Origin: Hydrolagus colliei
Lineage: Eukaryota
NCBI GenBank assembly: GCA_035084275.1
Contig: CM068756.1
Coordinates: 14,384,001 to 14,448,000, forward strand
Length of the DNA: 64,000 bases
Direction: 5' to 3'
Both the position numbers and the translations under genes were made by a program. Position 1 is the first letter of the stretch. Each line of letters starts with the position of its first letter. The notes beneath the pieces are model-generated. The model saw only the letters and a list, made by a program, of their open reading frames with translations, ran no database searches and was not told the origin of the DNA. Below, in pieces: positions 8,047-64,000 of this stretch.

Positions 8047-8150
8047 CTACAAAGACAACGATTAAAATCTGTGAAGCATTTCAAGATGTTTGTAGTTATA
8101 GGAGCCACAATAATAATTACAAAATCGGTCCATTGGTCATCCAAATGATT

Positions 8151-8459
8151 TGCCATCTGAGCCCGGCTGGAGATACTAATTCTCACCCAGTTTCCACCAT
8201 TCAACAGTCACAGCGGAATTATCAGAAGGGGAGAAAATGCACCTAAAGGTAACATTGGCAGCTATGATGACAACAGTGGTTTCAGGGGTTTGGGTCACTT
8301 TGAGGGGAACATCGGCAGCCACTGTCAAAGATAAATACAAACTTTATGTATATGTATTTAACAAATAATACAAAAATATAGATTAAGAGAACCATATGAA
8401 ATACCTGGGCCAATGGCAAGAATTACGAGATACAGAAACACAATCCGTTTGAAAATCAT
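8151..8459 (-). pseudogene. Psi-A: leader plus 5' half of a V exon of an internally deleted SIRP-like gene
   Basis: Leader 8405-8459 MIFKRIVFLYLVILAIGP|gt, followed by an 83-nt intron. V fragment from 8321 reads VAADVPLKVTQTPETTVVIIAANVTFRCIFSPSDNSAVTVEWWKLGEN*YLQPGSDGK (TAG 8176-8178), then jumps into intron sequence. Confidence 0.8.
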
Positions 8460-20268: not shown

Positions 20269-21516
20269 TTACTTTGATCTTGGTTCCCTGACCACGGCTG
20301 CTCCTCCGTGGTTTCTCAGATGGAGCTCAGCTTACTCTGTATCATTAACGGTAGTCAAATTCAACGTGACATAAGCCACCATCAACTTCTCTGCTCCGTG
20401 CATCATCTTTTACAGATAACATGACCACAACAACAACACATTGTGTTTGTAGAACACCTTTATTGTTGGGAGTACATCGCAGGGCGCTGACAGATTGTTG
20501 GATTCGCTGTTCTACCGATCGCTGTATACGTACTCATCGTGATGCTGATAAGTTTAGAATACTTCAAATATTTAAGAAGGAAACTTACATATTTATTAAA
20601 TATGCTGTTAACAATTACATGACATCTCGTATTTCAGTGATACCCCCACCACCCGCTCGGGTCCTGACCAGACTGTTCAGTGCTTTGGGACGTCCTCCCG
20701 AAGCGAAATGTGCTATATAGGTGCAATTTTGTTGTCGTTGTTGTTGATACATTGGGATTGAATAATTGCATGTGGGGATTGCATTTAAAATGTTCTTGTT
20801 TGCGGTGAACTGTATCTTTCCATTTCAACAACTCTGTTTTCAGATTAAATATCTGCTGCAATATAATGTACCTATTCTTCGCAATGTCTCAATCCCTTCT
20901 GATTTCTGCTTGTGCCTTTGAAAGAAATTCATATTTTGCTTAGACCAAATGAAAAACGTTTCGAAGCTCACGAGCTACCAGAGTCTATATTTCTAAAAAT
21001 ATATATAAAAAGTTGTCATCTTGAATCAAACTGAGTTTACTTAGCGGCTAATCTAAACACAGATGTGGAGTCACAAAAATCAGACAATTGTGATAAATTA
21101 TTTTGCACTCATTCCTTTCAACGTATTTCCATCCACTGCCCCGCGCTCCCTGAAACTCCATCCAAGAGCCTCTTTCAAGCACATCCTTCAAAAGCTTTGA
21201 TGAAATAACCAATTAATAGCTTGTTAAGGGGATAAGATATCAAACCCAAAAGGTAGCCACACTTTCGGGGATTTGAGTCACTTTCACTGAAGAATCACCA
21301 GCAACTGTGAGAAGATCGTCAAACAATGATATCTTAGATAATGTGTCAATGGGAAAAGCAAGCGAGTAAAAGAGGAAGAAACATGAGTGTGTATGATAAG
21401 CAGCAGATGGAAACAAGCTTGCACACATTTCATAGAATAACTAAATTGTAGAATAAATGTATACCTGTTGAAATCATATGTAAGACAGAGAGGTGCAGAA
21501 AGATAACACTGGCCAT
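20269..21516 (-). pseudogene. G3: internally deleted chimeric SIRP-like gene lacking most of V and all of C1 and TM
   Basis: Leader 21465-21516 (MASVIFLHLSVLHMIST). V start 21256-21304 (VAGDSSVKVTQIPESV) is fused to the TM-cyt1 intron. Cyt1 20872-20915 ends in TAG. Fused A/B exon 20269-20406 reads MMHGAEKLMVAYVTLNLTTVNDTE*. Confidence 0.85.
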
Positions 21517-30166: not shown

Positions 30167-33100
30167 TTACTTGGATCTTGGTTCCCTGCAGATAGCGGCG
30201 GCTGCTCCTCCATAGTTTCTCTCATGGAGCTCTGCATACTCTGCATTCTTAATGGTACTTTTAACTTTTCCTGTTTTATTAGAAGGACAAAGATCCAGAG
30301 AGGCGTATGTCATCTTGTTCTCCGTTGCCCCTTGCTTGGTCTGTAAAGGCAATAGTTGAGAATTTATTTCTATTAATTTGTTTTCAGTCTTCAGAAATCT
30401 CCTCAAATATGCAGCAACACTTGCCTCATAACTCATTTGATGAAGTCACTCTTTTAAAGAACTGAGCCAAACAGAATGTAGTGGCGACAAATTCTGTTAC
30501 GAACAGTTAGAAAAGAGCAGTGAAAACAATGTATGAGTTTTTTATTGATCTACAGAAATGTGGGATGTATATTTCCATATATAGTTGATGTCCTCAGTGC
30601 CTCATAAATTGACACACAATAACTAGTCTTATACAAGAAAACAAATTATTTGGCTGTACAGTTAACCCTTGCCGTACATGGGGGTTACGTTTTTGGAACA
30701 CTGCACACTCGGTAAAATTGCGTTGGGTAAGCTTAACAAGTAATGGGAAAAGGGGGTTTAGGGGAATCCAGCCACAGGCTACCCACCCCAAGCCTCCAGG
30801 CACATCCACACTTGACCACCACCAACAACAACAACGTCAACAATAACAATTTATATAGCGCCCTCCACGCCAGACGGCGTCTCAGAGCGCTTCACAGTAG
30901 CGGATCCCGGGACCGAGCCAGGAGCAGGGGCAGGAAGGTGACCAAAGGTGACGAAAAGTTCGGTGACCAAAAGCTCGGTGACCAATGCAAGGTACACACT
31001 GAGGTGGACAACAGCCGGCTAGCACGCTCTCCCCGCTCTCATTTCTCTCCCCACTCTCCCTGCTCTCCCCACTCTCGTCACTCTCCCTGCTCTCATCGCT
31101 CTCCCTGCTCTCCCTGTTCTCATTGCTCTCCCAACTCTCCCCGCTCTCATCGCTCATCACTCTCCCCACTCTCATAGTAGTCCAAGGCCAAGGAATCATC
31201 AGCCTCAAACTCCATTGAAGTGGATGCTTGGGGAGAGGCAGAAGTGGATGGCCGAGAAGATGCAGCAGCAGGTAAGTGTCAGCGGATGACTGCTGAGACA
31301 AACTGGCAGGTTGAAAGAAGGAAGTGATTTTCCGTTGTTTTGCCTTCCACTAGAAGTCTTTCATGAGCTCCCTGTAAGGCCCTAAGAGGCCATCCAGACC
31401 TGTTTTAAATTTCAGACTCCTTTCCATTATAGGGTCCATCTCCAAGCTTGACCTCCCAAGTGTGCATTGCGCGACCGGCATCCTCCCCAGTGCGAATGCG
31501 CGCGGGGTCAGCCAGCACTTTGCAAGTTTTACACGTGTTACACAAAAGAGTGATGCATTTTTTTCTTCTCATATAGTTGAATTCGCAATCGAGAAAGTTG
31601 TGTTTAGCGATGGTTAACTGTACACTGGCAGGTTGTTGCAATCATACCACAGCTCAGGACAGTGCCGAGAGTGAAGATCAGAGGAGAAAGAAAGATTAAA
31701 CGTAGACTAAGAAGAACAGCAAAATTGCACTTGTAAAGTGCCTTTCGTGATGGGAGGATATGTCAAGGCACTAGACGGTCTGTTTTAGACCCGAGCTGGG
31801 GTCGGGATCGAGGGGGGTGGAGGGAAGGGAGGGGAGTGGTGGGGGCATCATTGAAGCAGAGGTTCTTGATGCGGGACTTGAAGGAAGCTAGGGAGGGTGC
31901 GAGGCAGAGGGATTGCAGGATGGAATTCCAGAGTTTGGTGGCAGAATGGTTGAAGGCTCACCTGCCAATGGGCAGGCGGGTAGGTCGGGGGACACAGAGC
32001 AGGCTGGAGCCCACTATGTGGAGGGAGCGGACAGGTTGTTAGTGAGTTACAAGGTCACAGAGGTAGAGTGGTGTGAGGCCATGGAGGGCTTTAAAGGTGA
32101 GTACCAGGATCCTGAATTGAATCCTTGGGATGATGGGGAGCCAATGGAGTTAGGCCAGAATGGTGGCAATGGGGTCAGGGAGCTTGATTTGGGAGAGAAC
32201 AGGTGCTGCAGAGTACTGGATGATCGCAGCCTATGGAGGGAAGAGTTAGGAAGGCTGACAAGCAGAGCGTTGGCATAATCGAGGGAGGACGAGAACAGTG
32301 CAGATGGTAACTGCTGGAGTTCGGAGGGTGACGTGAGATACCAGACAGGTATAAACAACTCCGCTCTAAACGGATTAACCCTGGAATATGGGCTGATTAG
32401 GATATGCAGCACCACTTACCTCATAGGTCATTTGGTAATGCCACTGCTCTTTCCTGAACTTAGCCAAACAGAATTCAGTGGCCACAATACTGTTCGGAAT
32501 AGGTTAGAAAAGAAAAGTGAAAATCAACCCAAGATGTGCATTGACCTACAGAAATGTCTGTGTGTATCTTGTTGGTACATACTTGATATTCGCAGTGTGG
32601 CATAGATTGACACACGCAATAAAGCAGAAGAATAAATATTTCACTATACAGTGGCAGACTGTGGCCACCATATCACTGGAAAGCACCAGAGAGTGAAGAT
32701 TAGAAGAGAAAGAAAAATTAACCGTATTATATTTGCTATATATCAAATGCCAGGATTATTACTAGTATTAACCACAGGAATAGTACAAACTGTCTTACAG
32801 TGAGCACTGAAGTTAGTTCCACTCTATTTACTGAAACAATTTTGTATTTCTCAGATATACCTGAGCGTACACTGTCCTGTCCTTTTGTTTTTTAGGTCTT
32901 GGAGGTTTCTTAGAACTGATCAAATTTAATGTGGCATAAGCCATCCGCTCATTCTCTGCTCCATGCATCATCTAAAAAACAAAACGTGATCACAACAAGA
33001 ACAACATTGCATTTGTACCTTTCACGTAGGGAGTACATCCCAGGGCGCTGACAGATTGTTGTCTTCACTGTTCTCAAGATTGCTGTGTAAGTACTCATCA

Positions 33101-36100
33101 GAAAGCCCATAAATTAAAAATATTTCAAGTATTTGATAAGGAAATTTATAGTTTTATTGAATACTAAGTCAAGAATTGCATGACGACAACAATAAAATTG
33201 CACTTATATAGCGCCTTTAAGCATCTACTGAGATGCAATTAATAAATGTACCTGTTCTTCGCAGTGGCTCGATCCCGTCTGGTTTCTGTGTGGGCCTTGG
33301 AAAAAAATTCAATTAATAAAGAACTTGCTTTCGAACATGTTCACTTTGACCGACTGAAAAGCGTTTCGAAGCTCACAAGCTGCCAGAGTCTGTTTTTCTA
33401 AACTATATAAACCATATCCTGGGTTTAGATTGGAGTCTTGCATCTTCTTGCATCAAACTGTCTTTATTTAGACTCTTATCTAAGCCCAGTAGTCACAGCA
33501 ATCAAACAATCACTAATTATAAACTTTCTTATACACTTATTCCTTTCAATGTGTTATCCCTGCTCTCTGGAACCCTTTCCCAGAGTCCTTCAAATTCTCT
33601 CTTTCCTGCACCAACTATAAAACCTTTGATGAAATTACCAAGAGAATAGATAACTAACGGTATAAGATATAAAACCAAAGAGGTAATGTTGAACTTATAT
33701 AAATTGGCAGTGACACAGTTAGAATATTGTATCCAGGATTGTTTACCTCACTTAGGAAATTTACCAGGATGATAGCGGGAAAGATTGTCCTATGAGCAGA
33801 GACTGGAGGAACTGGGACTATTTCTTTTGCAATAAAGATGTTTTGACTGTCGACCTGATACAGATCTTTCAAATCTTGAGTGGTTTTAATTGTGTAAATG
33901 GAGAATTTATTTCCAATGGTAGGTGAGTTATCAAAAAGGCAAATGTAGCAGGAGACTCTTTTTCACACACTGAGTAGTTAGGATATGGAATCCCCTGTCA
34001 GGAGTGAACATAGGAACTAGGAACAAGGGTAGACTATTCGGCTCTTGAAGCCTGCTCCACCATTTAACTAGATCATGGCTGATCTACTTCAACTAATCTT
34101 TTCAATTCCAATTTTGGGTTGAAGCAGTTTGAGGCAAAATCCACATTAGCCTCCAAAAGGTACTAGACGGAATCCTGTAGCTCAGCAGTTAGAGCACTCG
34201 CCTTACAAGTATGAGATCTGTGTTTCGAATCCAGGCACATCAGAGTGAAACCTCTGAATTGGTTTCCTTACTCCACTTGCCTAATAATAATCCAACCAAA
34301 AAAAAAACCTAGAATAAATTAGTCATTTCAATCCATTGACTGTTTTGGACACACTATTGTGCGCAATTGGCTGCTGCATTTGGCCCACAAATACAGTTAA
34401 CCCTCATCGAATGCGACTTTATCAATTGTGAACTCAAGTATACCCTTTTTGACGAATACGCGCTGGCTGGCCCCCGCACGCATGCGCACTTGTGAAGACG
34501 CCGGCAGCTCCCTAACCCACCATTTCCCATTACTTGTTAAGCTTACCCAACATTATACTGAGTGCACAGTTTTCCAGGAACGTAAACCCTGCAATCGATG
34601 AGGGTTAACTGTATACAGTTCAATTCACTTTACAGTATATTCTGTGAAGCGCTTTGAGACATTTAGAAGATGTGAAAAGCACCATATCAAAATGAAACAA
34701 TTATTATAGATACAATACCTAAAATGAATCAAATGTAGGAGTATAAGGAAGATTCGGGTAAATTGGGACTCAATGGATTGCTCTTAGAAACCTAGCAGAG
34801 ACAGATTGGATAGAATAGTCTTTCCCTGTGCTGTGAAAATGTATGGTTCAATCCATCTCAACATGTATTGAGTCAATGTCACCATCCCATCTCACCACCA
34901 GCTTGACCAGCAGTGTCAAGCGCTTTGGGACGTCATCCAGATTTGATGTGCATTTGTATTGTACTGCTAAATGATGCCATAAGCACTTTAACCCAAATTC
35001 AGAGTTCAACAGCTGCATTTCAATTGATACTCGATATGTTTCTCCATTTATATACACAATCTGGATTTTGGTATATTGGGCACAATATCTAGGGTTACTG
35101 AGGAGACAAAAATGAAACTAACAATGAAGAAGGTTGTAATCTCATGGAAGAGATATAAAGATTGGTAGGTTGGAAAGACAGTTGGCAGATGAAATTAAAT
35201 GGAGAAAAGTGTGTTTTCAAATTTGGGGAATTGTACTCAGGTCTGACTAACAGGGTGCTGCAGGTGCAGTGGCCCAGGTAGAAAGTGTATGTTTTATATA
35301 ATCAAATATTCTCTACTCATAGTTTGTAACACAAATTAATTGTAGCGCTATGTGGAAAAGACAGATTAATTGTATGTGGACTCTTTAAAGAACAAATACA
35401 GACACAGTAGACCTTCTGTGCTGTACGTTTCTGTTGTTGCAATAGATTTCAGACATTGGGTCACAATAGATTTCAGACATTCGTTGCATGGAAATTTCTA
35501 ATTAAATATTCAGCTAAATGTATGCAGAGGGAGATTCTGTGAGGATATTGGCATTTGTGAATCAATCGCAACATATTAATCATTGGCACTGCTTTATAGA
35601 ATTTTTCTCAGACTTTATAATAATAATTATTATTACCTTTCACTCCTTGTCACCCGATACTCCCAAGCCTATTAACTGAATTAAATTAAACATTCACATT
35701 TAACTTCAATAAAATAGGAATGCATTTTACCTTGTTTTTTTCTTAATTGGCATTGTTTCCCAATGATGATCAAAAGCAGCAGAAACACAAGGCCTCCCCC
35801 TGCACATCCAATAATCAGTATTTTCTCGTTGCGAGAGTCAGTATCTACAAGAATAGCATAAATTGAGTGTGTAGTGATCCCAGCAATGAATTGTAGTTTC
35901 AGTAACTGCGCGGTGCATCGGACTAAACATGTTTTCAACAGGTTTTTTCAATTAATTTTTAAACAGGGTCTTGGCACAGAGCAGCAATGCAAGGCACTGT
36001 TGATGATCAAGCAGATTTTGAAGCTTCCAATTCATTGTACTAGCCAACCTGCGTCTAATACAATTTCATATTAATTAAGAATGCAGATTCCAATCCAGAC

Positions 36101-39100
36101 ACAGGAAAATTCGAGGTGGATGCTATTATGATCGATCATATTTTCATCTGACATATCATTTTGAGGAAAAGCCTCAAAAATTCATCACAAATTGACAGTT
36201 GATTTATAGGCAAATGCTGCAATTAATTTCTGCTACATAATGCCACTTAGTGGTTGAAAATATGACAACAAAAATAATAATCCTTGCTTGTGATATAGCG
36301 CCTTATCACATCGTCGAGACATCTCAGAGCGCTTCACAGGATATCTTGTAGATTGACTGAAGATGTTGTGGGCAAAATCAATTGGGTAACCAATAGTCAA
36401 TTGTAGGGAGGCTTTTAGCATTTAATAGCAATTTATAGAACATACCGGGATGCAAAAGATGTACATTTGATAGTATCATTTCTAATTGAACAGAATCTAA
36501 GAGTTTCAAGGTTGATGAGTTTTTAAGAGACGTTTAAGTTTTTTAAGGGATAGAATGAATCTTTTCAATTCCAAGACTATTTATGTACAACGCATTGCCA
36601 TTTTACGTATTTTTCTATGGAGTATTTCAACAGAAAATTACATGATTCTAATCTTCAGTATAAGTGAAAATAAAATATTTTCGATTGGTAATTTAGCTAA
36701 CAACAATTCACTGCAAGATATTGGTAAATAACCTGTGTTGGATTTTGAAATGGTGAAGATGGCAACTGCTGGAGTTCGGATCTGACATGAGATGTCAGAC
36801 AGGTTTCAACAACCCTGCTTTCGATTCAAAGACTATACATTGATAATTGATAGTTTTGTATATATTGAGTCTACAGCGAGAAATTTGGAGACAGGAAATG
36901 ATGGCGTAAATAAATGTAAATACGTTTTCCAGTAACAAGGTGTTTAATAATAATGACAGTAAACAATTAGGATTCCTACCTTTCAATCCTATGTTGGTTT
37001 TCGGAACGGTGTAGACAGCAACCACTGGAGATTGGAGAGTGACATGAGATGCCAGACATGTATAAACAACACCACTCTGCAAAGGTTGTGCGTCTTCCAT
37101 ATAGCTAGAAGCTTCATAAAGTCCAACTGTATTCTTCTCTTTAGTAGAAGTTACCCCAGTTATAACTTTGCTGCCTTTATTCCAAGTGAGCGTTACACCG
37201 TCCGGGTAAAAAGCAGCCGTTTTACACACAAGAACCTGTGATGTTGATGACTCGCTTTCAGAATCTCTCCGGAATATCGTAAGTGGGGTCGGGGGGACTG
37301 CAGGAGAACAACAAAAAAATTGCATTTGTATAGCACCATTCAAGTCTGGAGGACGTCTCTAGGCACTGGATAGTCAGTGTTCCACAGCCAAGCTGGGGTC
37401 AGGTTCGGGGTGGGTAAAGGGAAGGGTGTGGGGTGAGGTTAACTGATGGCACGATAAAAAGGAAGCTGTAAGGCAGGACTTGAAAGAGGCTGGGAATGGG
37501 CGAAGTGTAGGGATTGCAGGATGAAACTCCAGAGGTTGTGGGAGGAATGTCTGAAGCCTAGCACACTGATGGTAAGGCAGGTGGGTCAGGGGACATGGAG
37601 CAGGCTGGAACCGACAGTAGGGAGTGAGTGGACTGGTTGTAGGGGTTAGTAGGTCACAGATGTAGGGTGGAGCAAGGCAGCAAGGCTTTAAAGATGAGGA
37701 CCAGGATCTTGAATTGAATCCTCTGATGATGGGAACGAATGGAGTCGGGTGAGAATGGGGGAGATGGGGGTCACAGAGCTTGATGGAGGAGAGGACATAG
37801 GCTGCAGAGCTCTAGATGATCTGCAGCCTATGGAGGGAGAAGGCAAGGCTGACAAGCCGGGACAGACAGAGCAGAATAGTGTTACGTGTGATTAGTTAGA
37901 ATATAAAACTTTATTCCCATTTGAATTGTATATGAAAGGTTTCATTGTAACATTATAAGGAGGAAGGTGCTCCGAGATGCTATCCATGTGACAGGCACTG
38001 GACAAATGCATGCTGTTGTTGTCATATCACAGAATCTGGATTGTATTGGAATGAAACTGATGCTATTTGGATTTTTAATTTTGAACGATGTTTAGAGTAA
38101 CAAATGTTAAAAAATGCCTTTCAGGAGGTTCAGTCACTATTCTGCAGATTAACAGCAAGATGAAAGGGTTTAACTGTGATGATAAGATGGGTAAACATGG
38201 ATTGTATTTGATAGATATGAGAAGAATGGAAGGTAATTTCATTGAGCTGTCAACGAATGCTAAAATAGTGGACAATGGATTATTTTAGAAGAGGATAGAA
38301 GAGAAAATAGAATGCTACCCAACTCTAAAAAATTGGTTGTACCTATTTATTGTGAAATGAAGCAGTTTGGTTCATATGCAGTTCAGTGAAATTGTGGAAT
38401 CCACTCCCATAGGTGGCCTTAGACGCCGATTGAATTGGGATATTTAACAGAAATAGATGAGAGTTTTAAGGGGTTTGCAAAGTGACAGTGAAATAGAATG
38501 AAAAGTTCTGCCACCATTCTCGAGCAGCAATAACTGATTTTGATAAACCGCCCTTCACACAGGAAAACTGGAAATTTCTCTTTAATTAGAGTTATAAGCA
38601 AAACCATCAACACCAACATTTATTCTGTTTTTCTCTGGATTTTTAAGATTTCGTCAGCCAATTTTTTATAAGTAGAATGGGTAATTCAAAATGATTTCAT
38701 GGCTGATTGTGGGACATCATTATGCGCAGATTATTCAAGTTATCTCAAATTGGCTAATTATTTTTTAATATTTGCTTTTCATATCCAATAGTAAATTGTA
38801 AACGTCTGTAGCATGGGTGAAACTGACTTTGATTAATAATAATAATGCTTGCATTTGTTATTGACCCTTTCATTTTGAGATGACTCTCTGAGAATTCCCA
38901 AAAGTTCACTGCAAAGTGCGGCGATTTTGTAGGTGAACATAGCAGCCACAATAAAAGCCACAAAAGTGAATAATCAATTGTATCTGGGGTTTCAGTAGCC
39001 AGCACACAGGGATGAAAAAGTTTTCTCCTTTTGAATAGTTGCACTTAATCTTTAATGTCCACCTGAAAAGGCAGAATGAACGGTTTAGCACCTCATTCAA

Positions 39101-40344
39101 ACCTTGGGTTTCTCAAGCCATCAAGTGCTTCCCTAGCATTGTATTGGATTGTCAGTGTGCACTGTGATCTTCATGTATTGCCGTGGGACAATCTGAATAC
39201 ATGTATTCAGGACAGAATAAAATAAAATAAAATTTAAAAATAAATAAACTTAGAAAATATATAAATAATAAGATAATTTTGAAATAAAATAAAGAAATGG
39301 TTATTTCAATCCATGACTGTTTGTGAGATACTGTTGTGCTCAATTGGCTGCTGTGTTTCATCCACAAACATACAGTTAATTCACTTTGCAGTATATTCTG
39401 TGAAGTGCTTTGAGATGTCTAGAAGATGTGAAAAGTGCTATATCAAATCCAAGGATTTATTTTACTAGAACACAGTGCTTTAAAATGAATTGACTGTATA
39501 TTTTTGGGCGAAACGCTGCAGCCAATTCCCACTTTGCTGAGTAGTATAAATCCACCGGCTCACATCAGCGCCATACTGAAGAGGCAGAATTGTAATACAA
39601 AAAATTCTACTGATAAAATGTGTTGCGGGTTAAAATCAAATCTGTTCCTGTTTACTGTGCAATCATAACTTTTTTTTCTGGGAGTTGTAAATTAAACAAA
39701 TGGTTTAATTTAAGTTTAAACAAATGATGTCAAATTGCCCCAACACGTTCCCCGTATTGTGTCCAGACTTACCGTGTACAGTCAAACTTGATCCAGTTCC
39801 ATTTTCTGCTAGTTTCCCCTGACGAATGACTGCACAGTAATAGACTCCAGAATCGTTGAAATTCACATTTAGAATCTGGAACGTTTTGGCATCAAATATT
39901 TTCCTGTTGTCTTGTCTTTTATGTAAATACTCACTCTCTCCTCGCTTCCACCAGAGATATTTTATATTTGATTTGTGTTGAATGTCGGTAAACTTGCAGC
40001 CAAAGGCAACGTTTTCACCTTGCATTACTGTCCGGTCTTCAGGATATTGAATCACTTTTGTCAACGAATCACCTGCAACTGTGAGAAAATAATGCAAATC
40101 TATAAAAATTATTTTTTACAGATAATCTATAATTAGTGATTATAGAGTTGAAAAAGGATGATGAAATAAATATAGGGAAGGAGTGAGAGAAGGTGGAAGA
40201 AAGAGAAAGAGAGATGGATGCATTCACTGAACACATTTTGAAACACTTCACTGATATCGATCTGTATTTAAATGCATTGAACCACTTACCTGTGAAAATA
40301 ATCCCCATTAGAGAAAGATAGGGGGACATATCACTGGCCATCAT
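30167..40344 (-). CDS. G4: intact inhibitory SIRP-like V-C1 receptor, chimeric origin
   Basis: Leader 40290-40344 (MMASDMSPYLSLMGIIFT), V 39773-40078, C1 36980-37297, TM 35731-35844, cyt1 33252-33295 (GPHRNQTGSSHCEEQ), exon A 32861-32971 (MAYATL...TVYAQ), exon B 30167-30340 (MTYASL...AEYAEL...REPRSK*). The frame is open. Confidence 0.88.
30659..31620 (-). mobile_element. Internally deleted pogo/Tigger-like DNA transposon with nested L2 tail and short-period repeat
   Basis: CAGTTAACC ends with TA flanks. The minus strand at 31290-31439 reads MDPIMERSLKFKTGLDGLLGPYR/ELMKDF*WKAKQRKITSFFQP, like a Tigger transposase C-terminus. Internal sequence is shared with the 34394 MITE. Confidence 0.7.
31715..32290 (-). 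mobile_element. L2-type LINE 3' fragment
   Basis: LDYANALLVSLP..SLHRL..S motif in ORF 32047-32415, with an L2 tail at the left end. Confidence 0.7.
32294..32375 (-). pseudogene. Orphan C1-exon fragment in the G4 exon A-B intron
   Basis: Reads V*SGVVYTCLVSHVTLRTPAVTICTV, the F-G strands of the family C1 domain. Confidence 0.8.
34169..34690 (+). mobile_element. Deu-type SINE interrupted by a MITE
   Basis: Head GGAATCCTGTAGCTCAG, B-box GTTTCGAATCC, core and tail. Confidence 0.75.
34394..34611. mobile_element. Tc1/mariner (pogo-like) MITE, 218 bp
   Basis: TIR CAGTTAACCCTCATCGA(A/T)TGC matches at 20/21, with TA TSD. Confidence 0.85.
36733..36818 (-). pseudogene. Remnant 3' end of a second C1 exon behind the functional G4 C1 exon
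   Basis: Reads RVVETCLTSHV(frameshift)RTPAVAIFTISKSNT G|gt and is followed by G5-like intron sequence. Confidence 0.8.
37305..37860 (-). mobile_element. L2-type LINE 3' fragment inserted just upstream of the G4 C1 acceptor
   Basis: The L2 tail abuts the acceptor. Ancestral intron sequence (ggacaga...tgtgattagtt) resumes at about 37860. Confidence 0.75.
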
Positions 40345-43129: not shown

Positions 43130-43950
43130 AGGCATCCTGATTGGCATGCGCCTCCTCATTTCAGGCACTGGCAGCATCAGCATCCACAGATGCACACTCC
43201 ACCTTGCGAAGCCAGTCAGGAACCTGGGTGACTTGTTTGACCGTGAACTGTCCTTTCTCCACAATCCATGCCATGACCAGCAACACCTTCCACCACCTTT
43301 GTAACATTGCCAAACTCTGTCACTGCCTCAATCCCCAGGAAACTGAAACCCATAAACCCATTGTCATCCCAAGGCTTGACTATAGCAACTCACTCCTCGT
43401 CAGCCTCCACAACTCTTCCCTCCACAAGCTGCAGATCATCCAAAACTTTGCAGCTCATGTCACCTCACGCACCATGCTCTGTGACCCTATCATTCTCAAA
43501 CTCACCCAGTTCCACTGGTTCCCATTCCTCAGAGGATTGATTTCAAGATTCTTGTGCTCACTTTCAAGGCCTGGCACGGCCTTGCCCCTCCTACCTGTCT
43601 GACTTGCTGACCTCCTATCAACCCGTCCATTCCGTCCATTCAGCAGTCTCTGGCCTGCTCCATGTCTCCTGCCCGACACACCCTACCGTCTGCGGCCAGG
43701 CTTTTAGCCTCTCTGTCCCTACGCTTTAGAACTCCATCCTACAATCCCTTTGCCTCACTTCCTCCCTTTCCTCCTTCAAGACTGGTCTCAATACCCATCT
43801 CTTCCATCCTGTCTTCAGTCAAATTCTACCTCTCTGCCCTCCCTCATCCCCAAACCTGCATCCCCCAACTCACTGTACTCGGATCCTGACCCCTGACTGC
43901 TGAGTGCCTTAGGACGTCCTCCTGACATGAAAGTTGATCGACTATTTTGG
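43130..43950 (+). mobile_element. L2-type LINE 3' fragment
   Basis: ORF 43141-43602 contains HLCNIAKL..RLDYSNSLL..LHKLQIIQN, followed by an L2 tail. Confidence 0.75.
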
Positions 43951-50700: not shown

Positions 50701-53700
50701 TTCTAAGGTTGCTCAAGAGACAAAAGTGAAACTAAGAGTGAAGAAGATAGTAATTTCATGGAAGAGATATCAAGTCTAGTAGATTGGATAGACAAGTGGC
50801 GGATTAAATTAAATCGAGAAAAGCATGGTTGAACATTTTGTGATTTGTGCCCGGTCCTGACAGGATGCTGTGGGAGCAGTGGCCAGGGCAGAATGTGCAT
50901 TTTATATAATCAAACATTCTCTACCTGTATTTTGTAAAACTAGTTCATTGTGGCGCAATGTGGAAAAGGCAGATAGATGGGTTGTGGACTATTCAAAGAG
51001 TGAATAAAGAATCTGTGTGCTGAATGGCCTTCTATCCACCACGTAGTCCCTCCACCTCACCCCGTCCCTGGCCTCCTTCAAGTCCCGCCTCAAGATTCTC
51101 CCGTTCGATGGATCCATCAGCACCTCCTGATCCCCACTTTCCTCTCTACCACCCTGTCCTAAACTCGGGTCTGAAACACTAACTGTCCAGTACCTTGGGA
51201 AGTCCTTCTGACGTGAAAGGCGCTATAAACAAGTGTAATTTTGTTGTTGTTGTATGCCTTAGCCTTCTGTAGTTGTATCACAACAGATTTCAGACATTCA
51301 TTGCACGGAAATTTCTGATTAAATATACACGGGAAGAGATTCTGTTAGGTTATTTGTAATTCAATCGCAATAAATCGACGATTGTCATCACTTTACCAGG
51401 ATGTCTTTCTCTCCTTGTCACCTCGAATTCTCTCACCGATTGACTGAATTTTTGTACTAAATTAAGCATTTCCATTTAATCTCAATGGAATAGGAATACA
51501 TCTCACCTTTCTTTGTTTTTAATTGGCATTGTTTGCCAATGATGATCAAAAGCAACAGAAATACCAGGCCTCCCACTGTACATCCAGCGATCAGTCTGTA
51601 GTTAGGTAGAGCAGCATGTTCTACAAGAAAAGCATAAGTTGAGTGTGTTTGGGATCCCAGCAATCAGTTATAGTTTCAGCAACTGTACGATGCACCAGAA
51701 TAGGGATGTTTTAGCAGGTTTTGCTACTGTTTTTTTAAAATTTTTAAACAAGGTCTTGGCAGGTTTGTAGCAGTCCAAGGCAATGTTGATGAAAAACCAG
51801 ATAGTCTAGATGATGAACAAGACCTGGAATTGCAGGACAGTCACAGTGGGGGAAGGTTCTTGGGCAACCTTTGCCAAATGCTATTCTGAATAGGCTAGAA
51901 AGATGAGTCTGTCCAGGGAGACAAAGCATATTGCAATCCAAAGCACATTGCACCGAACATTGCACCGAACATTGCAATCCAAAGGAAAAATTAGATGTGG
52001 ATGACATTATTGAGCAGGGACCAGGAATTTCAATTTTGATGAGTTTTAAGAATCCTTTTTCTTGGGGAGATGGTACAAATCTTTTCAATTCAAAGACTGT
52101 ACACATGAAGCTGCATGTTATTTTATATATGTTTCTATGGATACTGGGCAAGAAAATGATATGGTTGTCTATATATAATTTAAATATGTTTGAATAACAA
52201 TTTAGTTAACAACAATTAATAGTAGGATATTGGTAGATGTGTGGAGTCCTGTAGTTTAGTGGTTAGAGTAATAGTGTCGCAAGCGAGAGACCATGGATTC
52301 GATAGCCGAGCAGGGCAAAATGTTGGGCAAATTTCCTTACTCTATATTCTGTTCACTTAGCAGTAAGTATGAATCCAGTTGTTGGTCAATTTGTGTATCA
52401 CTTTCCCAGGGATAATAATACATTAAAAACACTGTTTAAAAATTTTAATTAATAATTTTGTCACTCAATCCATGACTCTTTGTGGGATACTGCTATGCGC
52501 AATTTGCTGCCACAATTTGTCCACAAAATATACAGTCAATTCACTTCACAGTAGCTCTTTCAAATGTCTCGAAGATGTGCTGTGGCTCTATATCATATGC
52601 AAGGATTATTATCATTATCATTAAATTACCTGGGATAGAAACTGTGAATCTCGAAACTGCTGGAATCCGGAGGCTGTTGTGAGACACGGAACAGGAATAA
52701 ACAACCCCGCTCTGTACAGGCTGCTTCTCTTCTAAATAGCTGGAAACTCTGTAAAGGCCATTTGAATCCCTTTCTTTACTGGAATTTATGCCAGTTTTAA
52801 CTTCATTGCCATTTTTACTCCAGGTGAGTGTTATATCTTCAGGGTAAAATGCAGCCGTTTCACACACAAGAGTCAGAGGCTTTGTTGAATCTCCTTCAGA
52901 TTCTCTGGAGAATATCGTCAGCGGGGTCGGGGGGACTGTAGGACAGACAATGGTGGAGAATCAGTTAATTGTGATCAGTTGGAAGGTTAGACTTTATTCC
53001 CATTTGAATTCTCTTTAAATTGTTTCCTTACAACATTATAATAAACAAGATCCTCTGAGATGTTACCACACATTAAGGGCACTATGTTGCAAGTTATTAA
53101 GCAATCTGGAGGGAACTGATCCTGTTCGGATCTTTTATTTCAAACACTGTTAAAAGATGCCTTGGAGGAGGTCTTTCCACTATTCAGCAGATTATTAGCT
53201 TGATGAAAGGATTTAACTGTGACAAGAAGGTGCGTAAACATGGTTTATATTGATAGATTGGAGATAATTTGATTGGGCTGTCAATGAATGATAACATATT
53301 GCATGATGCATTCTTCTGATAGAGGTATACAAATAGAAGGAGACATAATTCTGATATTTTGGCAAAGTGTATTAGGCCTGATATGAAAGTTAAATGTATC
53401 AACGGGGACGGAAAGTGGTGAACAAATTGGATTCAAATTTATTCCACCATTCTCCAGAACAGTGGAGATTTCACCATCAACAACAACAACAATTTACATT
53501 TATAGAGCGCCTTTCACGTCGGGAGGACGTCCCAAGGCGCTGAAATTTGAGATATCAGCAAATCTCCCCATTAACACTAATATTCCTTTTGTTCGGTTGC
53601 ATTTGTTTACATTCTATGAGCTTTGAACCAACTTACCATAATTAAAATAAGAAATTCAAAACCATTTTATGACTATTGATGTGTGCAAATTTGTGCAAAT

Positions 53701-55429
53701 TGTCAAAGATTTTAAACATCTGTCTTTCATACAAATCAGAGATTCTGATCATTATTCTCATTAGTATTGTCTGTAAACTTATTAGTGTTACTGTTAGTAT
53801 ATAATAAGTAGTATTATTGTTGCATTAATATTAATAGAAATAATAGTAAACCTTGCAGTCAATATAGGGCCGTTTGTATTGAGATGACTTCTCAAAGCAT
53901 TTTCATATGATTCACTATAAAAGGCGGTGATTTAGTAAGGAGACCACAGCAGCCGGTTTTGCATGCAGCAATGTGCCATAAACAGCCATGGAGTGAATAA
54001 CAAACATTATCTGGGGATTCGTTGGCCAGGACACGGGAGGAACAATCTATTTTCTGTTTTCGAATATCACATGGTCTTTAACCTGAACAGGCAGAAGGGA
54101 CCTCAGTTTAGCGTCTCATCCAAATAAGGGGGAACCTCATGGAATTGTATTAGACTGTCAGTGTACACTGTGATCTTCAAGTTTTGAATCGGGACAATTG
54201 GAATAAATTTGTTGAGAACCGAATCAAATATGAGGTGGAATTAATTTTCTACATGTGACATTAGGAGGGTTATAAATGTTTGAAGGCATTGCTGAAAACA
54301 ATTATTGAGCAACTTAGATTCCACTTTGATGTGTGTGGTATAAATCTGCCAGCTCCTATGAATACAATTTTAAAAATTGCAATACTTTATTTGAATATTC
54401 TGTTAATAAAAATAAGTCAGGTTGAAATTTTAAAAAACCTCGGTGCTTTATTATCATAAATTTGTATCAAAGCAGAAAATTAAAAAATTAAGTAGGCATA
54501 AAATAATTTATCCAATACTGTTTCAAAATGCTGGCATGGACAGCCTTTCAACATTCTCTCTTACTATTGTATTCACACTCACCATGTACAATTAAACGCG
54601 ATCCAGTTCCATTCCCTAATGCTTTCCCCTGACAGATCACTGCACAGTGATAGACTCCTGATTCTTGGGAAGTCACATTTAGGAGTTGGAATGATTTGAA
54701 ACCAAATATTTTTCTGTTGTCGGGTCTTTTATGTAAGTATTCACTCTCTCCTTGCTTCCACCAGTGAAATGTTAGATCTGAACTGGGTTGGTTACCGGCA
54801 AACTTGCAGCTGAAGGTAACGTTATCACCTTGGAGTGCTGTCCGGTCTAAAGGATATTGAATCACTTTCATCGATGCATCACCAGCATCTGTGAGAAAAC
54901 AATTAAAACCATGCGTTGGTGATTATAGTGTTGAAGAAAGGTAACAAATTAACTATAGAGAATAATAATACTAATAATAATAATGCTTGCATTTGATATA
55001 GCACTTTTCACATCTTCTAGGCATCTCAAAGCACTTCACAGAATAAAGTGAATATGTGGGTGAAAGGCGGCAGCCAATTGTGCACAGCAGTGTCCCACAA
55101 ATAGTCATGGATTGAAATTACCCCCAAAAAATTTCAAGGGATTATTATTAGGTTTGTGGAGTAAGGAAACTTGCCCAAGGTTTCACCCTGCCTGGAATTG
55201 AACCCAGGTCTCAAGCTTGCAAGGCGAGTACCCTAACTACTGAGCTACATGACTCCACAAGACTCCCGGGAAAGGAGGGAAAGAGGATGCAAGAAAGTGA
55301 AAGAGTGAGAAACATTTTGAAACTATTCATCAATATTATTTTGCACTTAAGATGCGCTGCAGTAAAACACTTACCTGTGAAAATAAACCCCATTACAGAA
55401 AGATAGAGGAACAAATCATTCGCCATCAT
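47726..55429 (-). CDS. G5: intact inhibitory SIRP-like V-C1 receptor
   Basis: Leader 55375-55429 (MMANDLFLYLSVMGFIFT), V 54583-54888, C1 52630-52935, TM 51507-51620, cyt1 48882-48925 (GPLENQRGSEHFEDQ), exon A 48404-48514 (VDYVTL...TVYAE), exon B 47726-47899 (MTYASL...TEYAEL...REPRSK*). The frame is open. Confidence 0.9.
49085..49780 (-). mobile_element. L2-type LINE 3' fragment
   Basis: L2 tail plus CNLGVRF..LSF.PHI and PWSMPL motifs. Confidence 0.7.
52243..52625 (+). mobile_element. Deu-type SINE ending just past the G5 C1 donor
   Basis: Head GGAGTCCTGTAG, core and (ATT)n tail. Confidence 0.7.
54975..55260 (-). mobile_element. Deu-type SINE in the G5 leader-V intron
   Basis: Full-length match to the family. 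Confidence 0.75.
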
Positions 55430-62364: not shown

Positions 62365-63894
62365 CTAAGATATTGTTTCATGTTGTTCCAGACACCTGGA
62401 TATTTGGAGGAGATATCTTTATATCCACTGATTATTAGAGAATCCTCCAATATAACAAATTGTCATGTCCACAATCTAAACAGTCTGGTCCCGGTTAGCA
62501 GCGAACAACATAAATTTGATTCCTGTTGATTGATAATTTTATGGGCTACGATACAAATACAATAATGTGAATCAAATCACAATATTATTTTGAAGCAAAG
62601 AATGCCTCCTTACCTTTCAAGTTGTGAGATTTTAACATGGTCAACAATGAAGATGGTCAACACTATCACTACCAAGAAACAGGATATATACCGTGAAATC
62701 ATCATATTCTCTGACATTCCACGATAACCTAGAAAACAAATATTGGAATGCAAAAGGATTTACATGGAAACTATTCAATAATTAGGCTTTATTGGGAAAA
62801 TGCACACGTTCTTAACTATTTTCTATTGGAAGCTACAATGAGGTGGAGGAATATTATAAACTGTGCATTCAATTGATTGAAAACAGTAGAGAATAGCAGT
62901 GAATACCAATGCACAGGCAGTTTATTAGTGCTGTTTTAGAGATGTGTTTATATATTATGTGGTAATAGTTCCCCTGAGACTGTGTGCTCAACTTCAAATG
63001 TACCAGAGAGAATGACTCTTCAGACCCAAGCTGTGGCCACTATCGTAATCAAAACTGATTCCATTGGACATCTACTATTAAACTGAATTTCTTTAAAACA
63101 TCTCACAAAAGAGTTTTATTTTAATTACGGTGATTTTTGTTCCAAAGGAATAAGTAACAAAAGGTTTGTTCAAAAAATTAATCAGAAAATTCAATGGATT
63201 GATTAACAAATATTATTTGTTTCATTTGTACGTATGTATTAGTCCAAAAGTTTGATTTCTGATTTCAAACCTAAATATAGGTGGGGAGAGGACTATTGCA
63301 GGACTATTGCAGTTTGGCATGTTACTAAATGCCACAAAAGTAATGAACTTATTTGAAGGGAAGATATTTAGAATTTAATGGATAAACAAGAAATACTCAG
63401 ATCTGAGATATTCTTCGATTCAAAGACTCTACATTTATAGTTGCTAGTTTTGTATATATTAAGTCTACAGCGGGAAGATTGGATGCCTACAAATGGTGGC
63501 GTAAATAAATGTAAATATATTTTCTAGTAGCAAGGTGTTAAACAACAAAAGACTGCAAAACAAGTAGGCATCCTACCTTCCAATGCTGTGTACACTTTAG
63601 GAACAGTGTAGACGGCAACCACTGGAGATTGGAGGGGGACGTTAGATGCCAGACAGGTATAAACAACACCGAACTATACAGGTTGTGTGTCTTCCATATA
63701 GCTAGAAACTTCATAAAGTCCATCTGTATTCTTCTCTTCAGTAAAATTTATCCCAGTTATAACTTCACTACCTTTATTCCAAGTGAGCGTTGCACCGTCG
63801 GGGTAAAACGCAGCCGTTTTACACACAAGAATCTGAGATGTTGATGAATCTCTTTCAGAATCTCTGGGGAATATCCGCAGGGGGGTCGGGGGGA
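62365..63894 (-). pseudogene. G6 (3' part): activating-type SIRP-like receptor with Arg in TM and a nonsense codon in C1
   Basis: C1 63577-63894 has an in-frame TAG at 63674-63676. TM exon 62614-62728 reads GYRGMSENMMISRYISCFLVVIVLTIFIVDHVKISQLE. A candidate last exon 62365-62395 gives RCLEQHETIS* (uncertain). V and leader lie beyond the window. Confidence 0.75.
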
Positions 63895-64000
63895 CTGTAG
63901 GACACACATTGGAGTAAAATCGCGTTACTTGTGATTACTTGGAATATAAAACTTTATTCCCATTATTGTTGTTGTCCGAACAAGTTGTCTGGATTGTAAC

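What the first reader, a model, noticed from the sequence alone, without database searches (positions are those of the whole stretch)
35731..37297. G4 is an ectodomain swap: activating-type (G6-like) C1 grafted onto an inhibitory (G5-like) TM and tail, with the junction visible
Seen: G4 C1 is about 77% identical to G6 C1 versus about 56% to G5 (hand counts). G4 and G6 share the 318-nt exon length, a one-residue deletion (WNKGS) and about 160 nt of downstream intron (36818-36979 versus 63415-63576). At about 36818 this homology ends inside the 3' stub of another C1 exon, after which intron, TM, cyt1, A and B are G5-like. Known: paired receptors exchange ligand-binding domains between activating and inhibitory members. 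Inferred: a recombination that reversed the signalling sign of an ectodomain, rarely seen with its scar intact.
Basis: partly seen in the sequence, partly recalled or inferred. Interest (0 to 1): 0.8.

Follow-up and report, generated by a model that had tools for sequence, protein, structure and literature searches.

The report
Old activating/inhibitory receptor fusion gene scar
One inhibitory immune-receptor gene in this chimaera-like fish cluster carries the constant-domain exon and adjoining intron of the activating type, joined at a decayed leftover of its own old exon. The elephant shark counterpart has the same build, so this is probably an old, shared fusion rather than a fresh swap.

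Summary
G4's C1 exon (36980-37297) is 86% nt and 77% aa identical to G6's, against 57% aa to G5. Both share a 318-nt exon, a one-codon deletion and 160 nt of downstream intron (81%). The homology stops at 36820. An 83-nt frameshifted remnant of another C1 exon follows (36733-36815), with its donor site and an inhibitory-type intron.

- Six Callorhinchus milii loci show that the long C1 exon end plus introns "a" and "b" mark activating genes in both species. G4 is therefore a true activating/inhibitory hybrid, and G6 is not the derived one.
- The window is collinear with the C. milii cluster, and G4's positional counterpart there (the P0003 gene) is the same kind of hybrid, with its own C1 remnant just before the same intron.
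- In C. milii that scar is demonstrably older than the latest 95-97% homogenisation with an activating neighbour.
- G4 and G6 are not recent relatives (dS 0.27).
- G4's tail is not specifically G5-like.
- G6 carries an in-frame stop.

Best reading: an old illegitimate fusion, kept as an intact ITIM-bearing gene, whose ectodomain half later exchanged sequence with activating neighbours. This is a new member of a known kind of paired-receptor evolution, as in Siglec-5/14.

The parts
40290..40344 (-). G4 leader exon (ATG to donor GT)
   Evidence: tblastn with C. milii P0003; splice and ORF assembly
39773..40078 (-). G4 V exon with a J-like GTGSSLTV motif
   Evidence: Pfam V-set residues 29-120
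37305..37857 (.). Interspersed repeat inserted about 5-8 nt upstream of the G4 C1 acceptor. It is absent from G6 and from the C. milii counterpart. Its end now supplies the polypyrimidine tract.
   Evidence: Other copies at 31710-32263, 12786-13184 and 43417-43703. G6 and L001 are contiguous across the site.
36980..37297 (-). G4 C1 exon, 318 nt, activating-type (long exon end, one-codon deletion shared with G6)
   Evidence: 86.2% nt and 77% aa to G6; tree (G4,G6) 99/94; Pfam C1-set
36820..36979 (-). Intron part 'a': the first 160 nt of the activating-type C1-TM intron
   Evidence: 81% to G6 63414-63576 and 72-75% to four C. milii activating or hybrid genes; absent from plain inhibitory genes
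36816..36819 (-). Junction, 4 nt (AGCA on the gene strand) of ambiguous origin between part 'a' and the stub
   Evidence: Alignments; coordinates
36733..36815 (-). Stub: decayed last 83 nt of an inhibitory-type C1 exon. It has a 1-nt frameshift, has lost the YxC tyrosine and keeps a CAG|GT donor.
   Evidence: blastn E = 9e-12 and 4e-10 in the window, 2e-12 to the C. milii C1; identities 69-82%; alignment
36053..36732 (-). Intron part 'c': inhibitory-type C1-TM intron directly after the stub
   Evidence: Proximal 119 nt 81.5% to C. milii L001, 67.6% to G5. The distal 458 nt was found only in L001.
35731..35844 (-). G4 TM exon, uncharged (inhibitory type)
   Evidence: region tree groups G4 with G1, 89/90
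33252..33295 (-). G4 cytoplasmic exon cyt1
32861..32971 (-). G4 cytoplasmic exon A (MAYATL and TVYAQ tyrosine motifs)
30167..30340 (-). G4 cytoplasmic exon B (MTYASL, AEYAEL; stop codon). Its region is 88% identical to G5's.
63577..63894 (-). G6 C1 exon, 318 nt, with an in-frame TAG at 63674-63676
62800..63576 (-). G6 intron parts 'a' (63414-63576) and 'b' (62800-63413), conserved in C. milii activating genes
62610..62728 (-). G6 activating-type TM exon (arginine in the TM, short tail, stop)
   Evidence: tblastn to C. milii P0005; frame check; 77-78% nt to C. milii activating loci

Best explanation
**The cluster.** The window holds part of a tandem cluster of V-C1-TM immunoglobulin-superfamily receptors of a holocephalan-like fish. 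Two old gene types alternate in it.
- Activating genes: C1 with a long exon end, then intron a, intron b, then a TM exon with an arginine and a short tail.
- Inhibitory genes: C1 with a short exon end, then intron c, an uncharged TM exon and tyrosine-motif exons.

**What G4 is.** G4 is a fusion of the two types. The 5' half of an activating-type gene, at least the C1 exon and intron a, was joined illegitimately to an inhibitory gene broken inside its C1 exon. This left the last about 83 nt of that exon as a dead stub in front of intron c.

**When it formed (inferred).** The fusion most likely arose before this lineage split from the Callorhinchus lineage. The gene at the same position in C. 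milii has the same build. The likeliest route is a deletion or unequal exchange between an activating gene and the inhibitory gene downstream of it. This step is inferred, not shown.

**What happened since.** The fused gene has stayed an intact ITIM-type inhibitory receptor. Its ectodomain half has gone on exchanging sequence with activating neighbours by ordinary homologous gene conversion. Such conversion can run no further than the scar, because homology ends there. That is why G4 resembles G6 up to 36820 and no further. G4's present a|stub junction probably also reflects loss of intron part b.

**Function (inferred from motifs only).** Splicing from the C1 donor at 36980 to the TM acceptor at 35844 would skip the stub. 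The product would present an activating-like ectodomain on an inhibitory tail, which is the usual logic of paired receptors.
For: **G4 is coding-intact.** It has a 373-aa ORF, all seven exons have canonical splice sites, and Pfam finds V-set and C1-set domains.

**The two gene types are consistent across species.**
- G6 and C. milii L004act, L005act and L006act all have the long exon end plus a, b and TMact. L003act keeps late b joined to TMact.
- G5 and the P0007, P0039, P0040 and P0046 genes all have the short exon end followed by c and TMinh. G1 has the short exon end and TMinh without detectable c.

**Hybrids with C1 remnants immediately 5' of c.** These are G4 (83 nt), L001/P0003 (about 24 nt plus an internal deletion) and L003/P0006 (about 28 nt).

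**Positional correspondence.**
- Window 64000 to 17700 is collinear with C. milii L006+L001. In both species the order is activating, inhibitory, hybrid, then a G2-like gene.
- The distal part of c (458 nt, 72%) was found only in G4 and L001. Proximal c is 81.5% to L001 against 67.6% to G5.

**The scar is older than the latest homogenisation in C. milii.**
- L001 is 95-97% identical to L004act from the 5' flank to about 46 nt before its junction.
- The last 46 nt keep 19 nt that L004act and L006act have lost.
- Its stub differs from C. milii C1 exons at about 5 of 26 positions.

**Within-species similarity exceeds between-species similarity.**
- Intron a: G4-G6 81% against 72-76% to C. milii.
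- C1 tree: (G4,G6) 99/94, while G5 groups with C. milii inhibitory genes.
Against: - The three hybrid junctions differ: a|stub83 in G4, b|stub in L001 and a'|stub28 in L003. A single old event therefore needs later deletions spanning the original junction in each gene. G4's stub reaches about 30 nt further 5' than L001's.
- The overlap between the stubs is only about 25 nt and shows no convincing shared derived change.
- Tandem repeats make positional orthology less than certain. G6's TM exon is closer to L003act and L005act than to its positional counterpart L006act.
- Only about 150 kb of the C. milii cluster was sampled.
- G6's V exon lies outside the window, so it is unknown whether the whole ectodomain of G4 is G6-like.
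- No transcript or read evidence was available.
Confidence: 0.6

Rival explanations
1. After the split from the Callorhinchus lineage, a G6-like activating gene donated its C1 exon and 160 nt of intron to an inhibitory gene of this species. The a|stub join at 36816-36820 is the primary breakpoint. The similar C. milii hybrids then arose independently. One possible route is recurrent one-sided repair that starts by homology in the ectodomain exons and ends by end-joining.
For: - G4's nearest relative for C1 and intron a is G6 (99/94; 86% and 81%).
- Homology ends exactly at the stub.
- The three hybrids have three different clean two-part junctions. G4's stub is longer at its 5' end than L001's, which a single primary junction cannot give without extra deletions.
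Against: - Independent breaks would have to fall within the last 90 nt of the same exon of the same positional gene in two lineages.
- In C. milii the scar demonstrably predates the latest homogenisation, so similarity to an activating gene does not date a scar.
- G4-G6 divergence (dS 0.27; 19% in the intron) is close to the between-species distance of about 25%.
- The stub is no closer to any inhibitory C1 in the window (69-82%) than to C. milii ones (75-80%).
Confidence: 0.25
2. G6 is the derived chimera. On this view, an inhibitory G4-like gene donated its C1 to a gene with an activating TM exon, and the G4 arrangement is the original one.
For: - Inhibitory G1 has a C1 that clusters with G4+G6 (94/95) and no scar.
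- C. milii P0007 is a scarless inhibitory gene with an activating-like C1 sequence.
Against: - The contiguous C1(long)-a-b-TMact arrangement of G6 is conserved in three complete C. milii activating genes, at 72-78% across about 1.6 kb. A truncated fourth copy keeps b joined to TMact.
- G4, not G6, carries two C1 3' ends in tandem.
Confidence: 0.03
3. Assembly artefact. On this view, the a|stub join is a mis-join of reads from different paralogues in a repetitive cluster.
For: - The cluster is full of 65-88% similar paralogues and repeats.
- No read data were available.
Against: - An independent assembly of another species shows the same order of parts in the counterpart gene: activating-type C1 and intron, then a C1 remnant, then the same c intron.
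- The stub is a decayed sequence, not a copy of any paralogue in the window.
- Paralogues here are too diverged (at most 88%) for collapse.
Confidence: 0.03

Closest known systems
Siglec-5/Siglec-14 and Siglec-11/Siglec-16 paired receptors of primates (partial gene conversion of the ligand-binding exons)
   Same: - Adjacent inhibitory and activating genes keep similar ectodomain exons by repeated sequence exchange, while the TM and tail exons stay distinct (PMC4042635; PMC5701461).
- Here, within-species similarity of C1 and flanking intron exceeds similarity to the other species' counterpart, and it stops before the TM exon.
   Different: - The proteins here are V-C1 rather than V-C2 lectins, and the lineage is a cartilaginous fish.
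- The 3' limit of exchange is fixed by a non-homologous scar (an exon stub) rather than by fading homology.
- No ligand, expression or signalling data exist.
Human SIGLEC14/5 fusion allele (SIGLEC14-null)
   Same: A single gene combines the 5' part of the activating gene with the 3' part of the neighbouring inhibitory gene (PMC4042635, citing Yamanaka 2009). G4 and the C. milii P0003 gene have the same logic and sit in the same gene order, activating gene upstream of inhibitory.
   Different: - The human fusion arose by recombination within highly similar sequence. It leaves no scar and is a polymorphism.
- G4's junction is illegitimate, with an intron joined to mid-exon, and keeps an 83-nt exon remnant.
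- G4's neighbouring activating and inhibitory genes (G6, G5) are still present, and the fusion appears fixed and old.
CEACAM paired receptors (mammals, Xenopus)
   Same: Ligand-binding domains of ITIM-bearing and activating members co-evolve in a species-specific way within tandem clusters (PMC2832619; PMC5112662).
   Different: The domain types and signalling motifs differ. No exon-stub scar was noted in the abstracts seen here; the full texts were not read.
SIRP family (SIRP-alpha, -beta, -gamma), the name given automatically to the C. milii relatives
   Same: - An N-terminal V domain with a J-like motif is followed by a C1-set domain.
- There are ITIM-type inhibitory members and members with a basic TM residue.
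- PDB SIRP-alpha (2wng) is among the sequence matches, E = 2e-11.
   Different: - There is one C1 domain here, not two.
- Antibody light chains and shark UrIg2 match equally well.
- Orthology to SIRP was not tested and should not be assumed.

Membership tests
Paired activating/inhibitory IgSF receptors | Closely related ectodomains on members with opposite signalling parts, encoded in one cluster | tested here: met
   - G4 (uncharged TM, tyrosine motifs) and G6 (arginine TM, short tail) share a C1 at 86% nt and 77% aa.
- C. milii P0003 and the L004 activating gene are 95-97% identical over the V-C1 region.
Paired activating/inhibitory IgSF receptors | Inhibitory member carries ITIM/ITSM-type tyrosine motifs | tested here: inconclusive
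   - G4's tail has MAYATL, TVYAQT, MTYASL and AEYAEL. These are ITIM-like, but the -2 residues (M) are not canonical.
- C. milii relatives have the canonical VAYVTL and LTYASL.
- Phosphatase recruitment was not tested.
Paired activating/inhibitory IgSF receptors | Activating member has a charged TM residue and pairs with an ITAM adaptor | tested here: inconclusive
   - An arginine lies in the TM of G6 and of the C. milii activating exons.
- Adaptor pairing cannot be tested with these tools.
- G6's C1 has an in-frame stop.
Concerted evolution of paired-receptor ectodomains by gene conversion (Siglec-5/14 type) | Paralogues within a species are more alike in ectodomain exons and flanks than positional counterparts between species | tested here: met
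   - C1 tree: (G4,G6) 99/94.
- Intron a: 81% within the species against 72-76% between species.
- L001-L004act is 95-97% against G4-L001 75%.
Concerted evolution of paired-receptor ectodomains by gene conversion (Siglec-5/14 type) | The exchange stops before the TM and tail exons | tested here: met
   - G4-G6 homology ends at 36820.
- L001-L004act near-identity ends about 46 nt before the b|stub junction.
Fusion gene between neighbouring paired receptors (SIGLEC14/5 type) | 5' part of the activating gene joined to the 3' part of the inhibitory gene | tested here: met
   Activating-specific long exon end plus intron a lies upstream, with inhibitory-specific c, TM and tail downstream.
Fusion gene between neighbouring paired receptors (SIGLEC14/5 type) | Junction formed by homologous recombination within similar sequence, leaving no scar | tested here: not met
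   The junction joins an intron to mid-exon with 4 ambiguous nt and leaves an 83-nt exon remnant.
SIRP family | V-C1-C1 ectodomain and orthology to SIRP genes | tested here: not met
   - There is a single C1 domain.
- PDB matches to SIRP-alpha are no better than those to light chains or UrIg2.
- Orthology was not tested.

The most novel reading that the evidence does not exclude
The same inhibitory backbone gene has been re-grafted independently in two chimaera lineages, and a third time in the C. milii P0006 gene. The proposed route is a one-sided repair process. It starts by homology in the ectodomain exons, copies on into the activating gene's private intron, and ends by end-joining back into the recipient's own C1 exon. 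Each event would leave a differently trimmed stub. That would amount to a recurrent mechanism for moving an ectodomain from activating to inhibitory signalling.
Probability: 0.2. Interest if true: 0.6.

Novelty: new member of a known kind. Interest (0 to 1): 0.4.

Why it matters
Paired activating and inhibitory receptors are thought to keep matching ligand-binding domains through repeated sequence exchange. Most worked examples come from mammals.

Here the same dynamics appear in the deepest-branching jawed-vertebrate lineage with sequenced genomes, in an apparently undescribed V-C1 receptor cluster. A physical fossil of the founding fusion is still readable in two species.

The fixed non-homologous scar gives a natural boundary marker. 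It separates the age of the fusion from the age of later homogenisation, which ordinary scarless conversion does not allow.

The scope is limited. This is comparative genomics only, the principle is already known, and no function has been measured.

Tried and rejected
- **Activating-type relatives by protein search.** Searching the C-terminal 61 residues of C. milii P0005 returned only P0005 itself and P0003. The activating genes had to be found by tblastn in fetched loci instead.
- **Exact look-ups.** P0008 and P0015 were not on record. Cluster members P0039, P0040 and P0046 were used instead.
- **Shared derived changes in the stubs.** 'GTCAG' looked shared between the G4 and L001 stubs, but it is simply the Ser codon common in functional C. 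milii exons. The shared CCGA is a CpG transition. I rejected both as evidence.
- **Dating the stub from its divergence.** The 69-82% identities to functional exons fit both an old and a younger origin, because 83 nt is too short.
- **G1 as the unswapped parent of G4's backbone.** G1 is sister to G4 for V and TM. However, the stub is only 70% identical to G1's C1 end, and G1-G4 introns are as diverged as the between-species distance. It does not discriminate between the models.
- **UrIg/UrIg2 as the family.** The PDB match is no better than to light chains, and the paper does not describe these genes.
- **G6's V exon.** It lies beyond the window. The window's own genome does not appear in the protein collection, where the best identity was 63%, so it could not be fetched.

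Full report
**What the window holds.** There are no N runs. Six related genes or fragments lie on the minus strand. Each is built from leader, V, C1, TM and cytoplasmic exons. The best protein matches are uncharacterised V-C1-TM proteins of the elephant shark Callorhinchus milii at 54-63% identity. These carry automatic names such as "SIRP-like". More distant relatives occur in sharks and rays. No protein of the window's own genome is in the database, so the window comes from a different, probably holocephalan, species.

**Exon map.**
- G6: C1 63577-63894. The TM exon at 62610-62728 encodes MMISRYISCFLVVIVLTIFIV plus a short tail, which is the activating type. It matches C. milii P0005. The V exon lies beyond the window.
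- G5: leader 55376-55429, V 54584-54898, C1 52640-52936, uncharged TM 51505-51621, cyt1, A and B.
- G4: seven exons from 40344 down to 30167. All have canonical splice sites and assemble into an intact 373-aa ORF with V-set and C1-set domains and four tyrosine motifs in the tail.

**Checking the observation.** It holds.
- G4 and G6 C1 exons are both 318 nt and match at 274/318 positions (86.2%) and 77% of residues. G4 against G5 is 57% of residues.
- They share a one-codon gap.
- blastn aligns 36820-37305 with 63414-63902 at 84.9%, E = 5e-154. The 160-nt intron part alone is 81%.
- The homology ends at 36820. After 4 nt comes an 83-nt remnant of the last part of a C1 exon (36733-36815). It is frameshifted and has lost its conserved tyrosine, but keeps its CAG|GT donor. 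The intron that follows is one that directly follows the C1 exon in G5.
- The remnant is significant: E = 9e-12 and 4e-10 within the window, and 2e-12 against a C. milii C1 exon.
G6's C1 has an in-frame TAG at 63674-63676. A 553-nt repeat sits 5-8 nt upstream of G4's C1 acceptor, absent from G6 and from C. milii.

**Evidence from C. milii.** I fetched six loci covering about 150 kb of one C. milii scaffold. Introns are still alignable between the two species at about 70-77%. This allows the C1-TM intron to be split into parts.
- 'a' is G4 36820-36979 and G6 63414-63576.
- 'b' is G6 62800-63413.
- 'c' is G4 36053-36732.

The parts sort the genes as follows.
- Every complete activating gene has a long C1 exon end, then a, then b, then the arginine TM exon. 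These are G6 and the C. milii activating genes in L004, L005 and L006. A truncated copy in L003 keeps late b joined to the TM exon. The unit is 72-78% identical between species across about 1.6 kb.
- Plain inhibitory genes (G5 and the C. milii P0007, P0039, P0040 and P0046 genes) have a short C1 exon end followed at once by c and the uncharged TM exon. G1 has the short exon end and the uncharged TM exon, but no detectable c.
- Part b and the activating TM flank occur nowhere else, except in one C. milii inhibitory gene, L001.

G4's C1 and intron a are therefore truly of activating type. G6's arrangement is the ancestral one for activating genes. The idea that G6 is the derived chimera fails.

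**The hybrid build is not private to G4.**
- The window from 64000 to about 17700 is collinear with the merged C. milii loci L006+L001. The gene order is the same: activating gene, plain inhibitory gene, hybrid inhibitory gene, then a G2-like gene.
- G4's counterpart is the P0003 gene (L001), and it is also a hybrid. It runs C1 with the long end, a, b, then about 24 nt that align to the C1 exon (CACGTCAGTTTCCGAATTCCAGCG), a roughly 55-nt internal gap, and then c.
- The distal 458 nt of c was found only in G4 and L001 among all sequence examined. Proximal c is 81.5% identical between them, against 67.6% to G5.
- A second C. milii gene, P0006 in L003, is a third hybrid. It has about 100 nt of a, then the last about 28 nt of a C1 exon with its donor, then c.

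**Scar age against similarity age.**
- In C. milii, L001 is 95-97% identical to the activating gene in L004 from about 600 nt upstream of the start codon through V, C1, a and most of b.
- That near-identity ends about 46 nt before the junction. In those last 46 nt L001 keeps 19 nt that L004act and L006act have lost but that L005act, L003act and G6 retain.
- L001's stub is also far more decayed than 3-5% divergence would allow. The scar there is therefore older than the latest homogenisation.
- In other words, a pre-existing hybrid was later converted by an activating neighbour, over the stretch where the two are homologous.
- The same reasoning applies to G4. Resemblance to G6 up to 36820 does not date the junction.
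- G4 and G6 are in any case not close. dS is 0.27 with dN/dS 0.44, and intron a differs by 19%, against about 25% between species.

**Trees by segment.**

| Segment | Result |
|---|---|
| C1 exon | (G4,G6) 99/94, joined by inhibitory G1 at 94/95; G5 groups with C. milii plain inhibitory genes |
| V exon | (G4,G1) 99/99 |
| TM exon with flanks | (G4,G1) 89/90; G5 unresolved |

- Only the exon B region of G4 is specifically G5-like (88% over 557 nt). It lies beyond a roughly 2-kb insertion in the A-B intron that contains another C1 fragment and a repeat.
- "G5-like tail" is therefore too specific. The tail is inhibitory-type and is itself a mosaic.
- C1 sequence type is also not a strict marker of signalling sign. 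The robust markers are the exon end and introns a and b.

**Best explanation.** An activating-type gene head was joined illegitimately to an inhibitory gene broken in its C1 exon. This most likely happened once, before the two lineages split. The order activating-then-inhibitory in every unit makes a deletion or unequal exchange between neighbours the simplest route, though that step is inferred. The product has been kept as an intact inhibitory receptor. Its head has continued to be homogenised with activating neighbours in each species. Loss of b in G4, and trimming of the stub in the C. milii genes, would be later deletions.

I put this at about 0.6. Its main weakness is that the three junctions differ, and G4's stub extends about 30 nt further 5' than L001's. 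A single origin therefore needs deletions spanning the original junction in each gene.

**Rivals.**
It needs breaks within the last 90 nt of the same exon of the same positional gene in two lineages.
- Mis-assembly is unlikely (about 0.03), because an independent assembly of another species shows the same order of parts and the stub is not a copy of any paralogue.

**Comparison with what is known.** Paired receptors that keep their ligand-binding exons alike by gene conversion are well documented. Examples are Siglec-5/14 and Siglec-11/16 (PMC4042635, PMC5701461) and the CEACAMs (PMC2832619, PMC5112662). The human SIGLEC14/5 allele is a fusion of the activating gene's 5' part with the inhibitory gene's 3' part (PMC4042635).

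G4 works like these. It differs in that the junction is non-homologous and has left a readable exon remnant, and in that the fusion appears old and fixed. The family should not be filed as SIRP. It has one C1 domain, and its PDB matches to SIRP-alpha are no better than those to light chains. I found no paper describing this holocephalan cluster, but the library searched is incomplete.

**Verdict.** This is a real, tidy molecular fossil of an activating-to-inhibitory fusion. It is probably ancient and shared rather than a fresh swap, and it is an instance of a known evolutionary pattern. Interest is moderate.

Noticed in passing
window 63674-63676 (minus strand): G6's C1 exon has an in-frame TAG where other genes have CAG (..QPV*FGVVYTC..). 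In this assembly the activating partner of G4 is therefore a pseudogene, a null allele or a sequencing error. The C1 fragment at 32293-32425 has TAG at the same codon.
   Followed up: partly
window 31710-32425 and 30380-32726: G4's A-B intron holds a roughly 2-kb insertion. It contains the 3' third of a C1 exon (32293-32425, truncated by a repeat at 31710-32283). About 280 nt of the intron is duplicated on either side (32380-32660 and 30380-30662). The C. milii counterpart lacks the insertion. Exon B beyond it is 88% identical to G5's.
   Followed up: partly
window 37305-37857: A 553-nt interspersed repeat is inserted 5-8 nt upstream of G4's C1 acceptor. Its T-rich end now forms the polypyrimidine tract. 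Whether this affects splicing is unknown.
   Followed up: partly
window 16961-17089 (+) next to G2 C1 17402-17746 (-): An inverted partial copy of the 5' part of G2's C1 exon lies about 300 nt downstream of the exon. It is another rearrangement scar in the cluster.
   Followed up: no
window about 2440-2470 (G1 C1-TM intron, minus strand): A short telomere-like run (CCCTAA-type units: CCCTAACGCTAACCCTAACCCTGAAAA) lies inside G1's unusually short C1-TM intron. G1 also has small deletions in C1 and a stop in its exon B homologue (412-501), so it may be a pseudogene.
   Followed up: no
window 36820-36850 and 63414-63445; L001 12795-12830 and the C. milii activating genes: The last about 30 nt of intron part a (AATGTATAGTCTTTGAATCGAA) is nearly invariant across both species and all activating or hybrid genes. 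This is far more conserved than the surrounding intron. G4's junction lies exactly at its end.
   Followed up: no
L003 23440-24029; L005 2563-3608 (C. milii): Two C. milii activating genes are truncated. One keeps only the 5' part of C1 joined directly to mid-b. The other keeps only the 3' part of C1. Activating TM exons fall into two sequence subtypes, and G6's is closer to the L003/L005 subtype than to its positional counterpart in L006.
   Followed up: partly
window 20272-21332 and 8149-8328: Gene debris lies between the main genes. There are cyt1-like and B-like exon remnants with a stop (20272-20919), a leader/V-like fragment (21267-21332) and a G2-type V pseudo-exon with a stop (8149-8328).
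   Followed up: no
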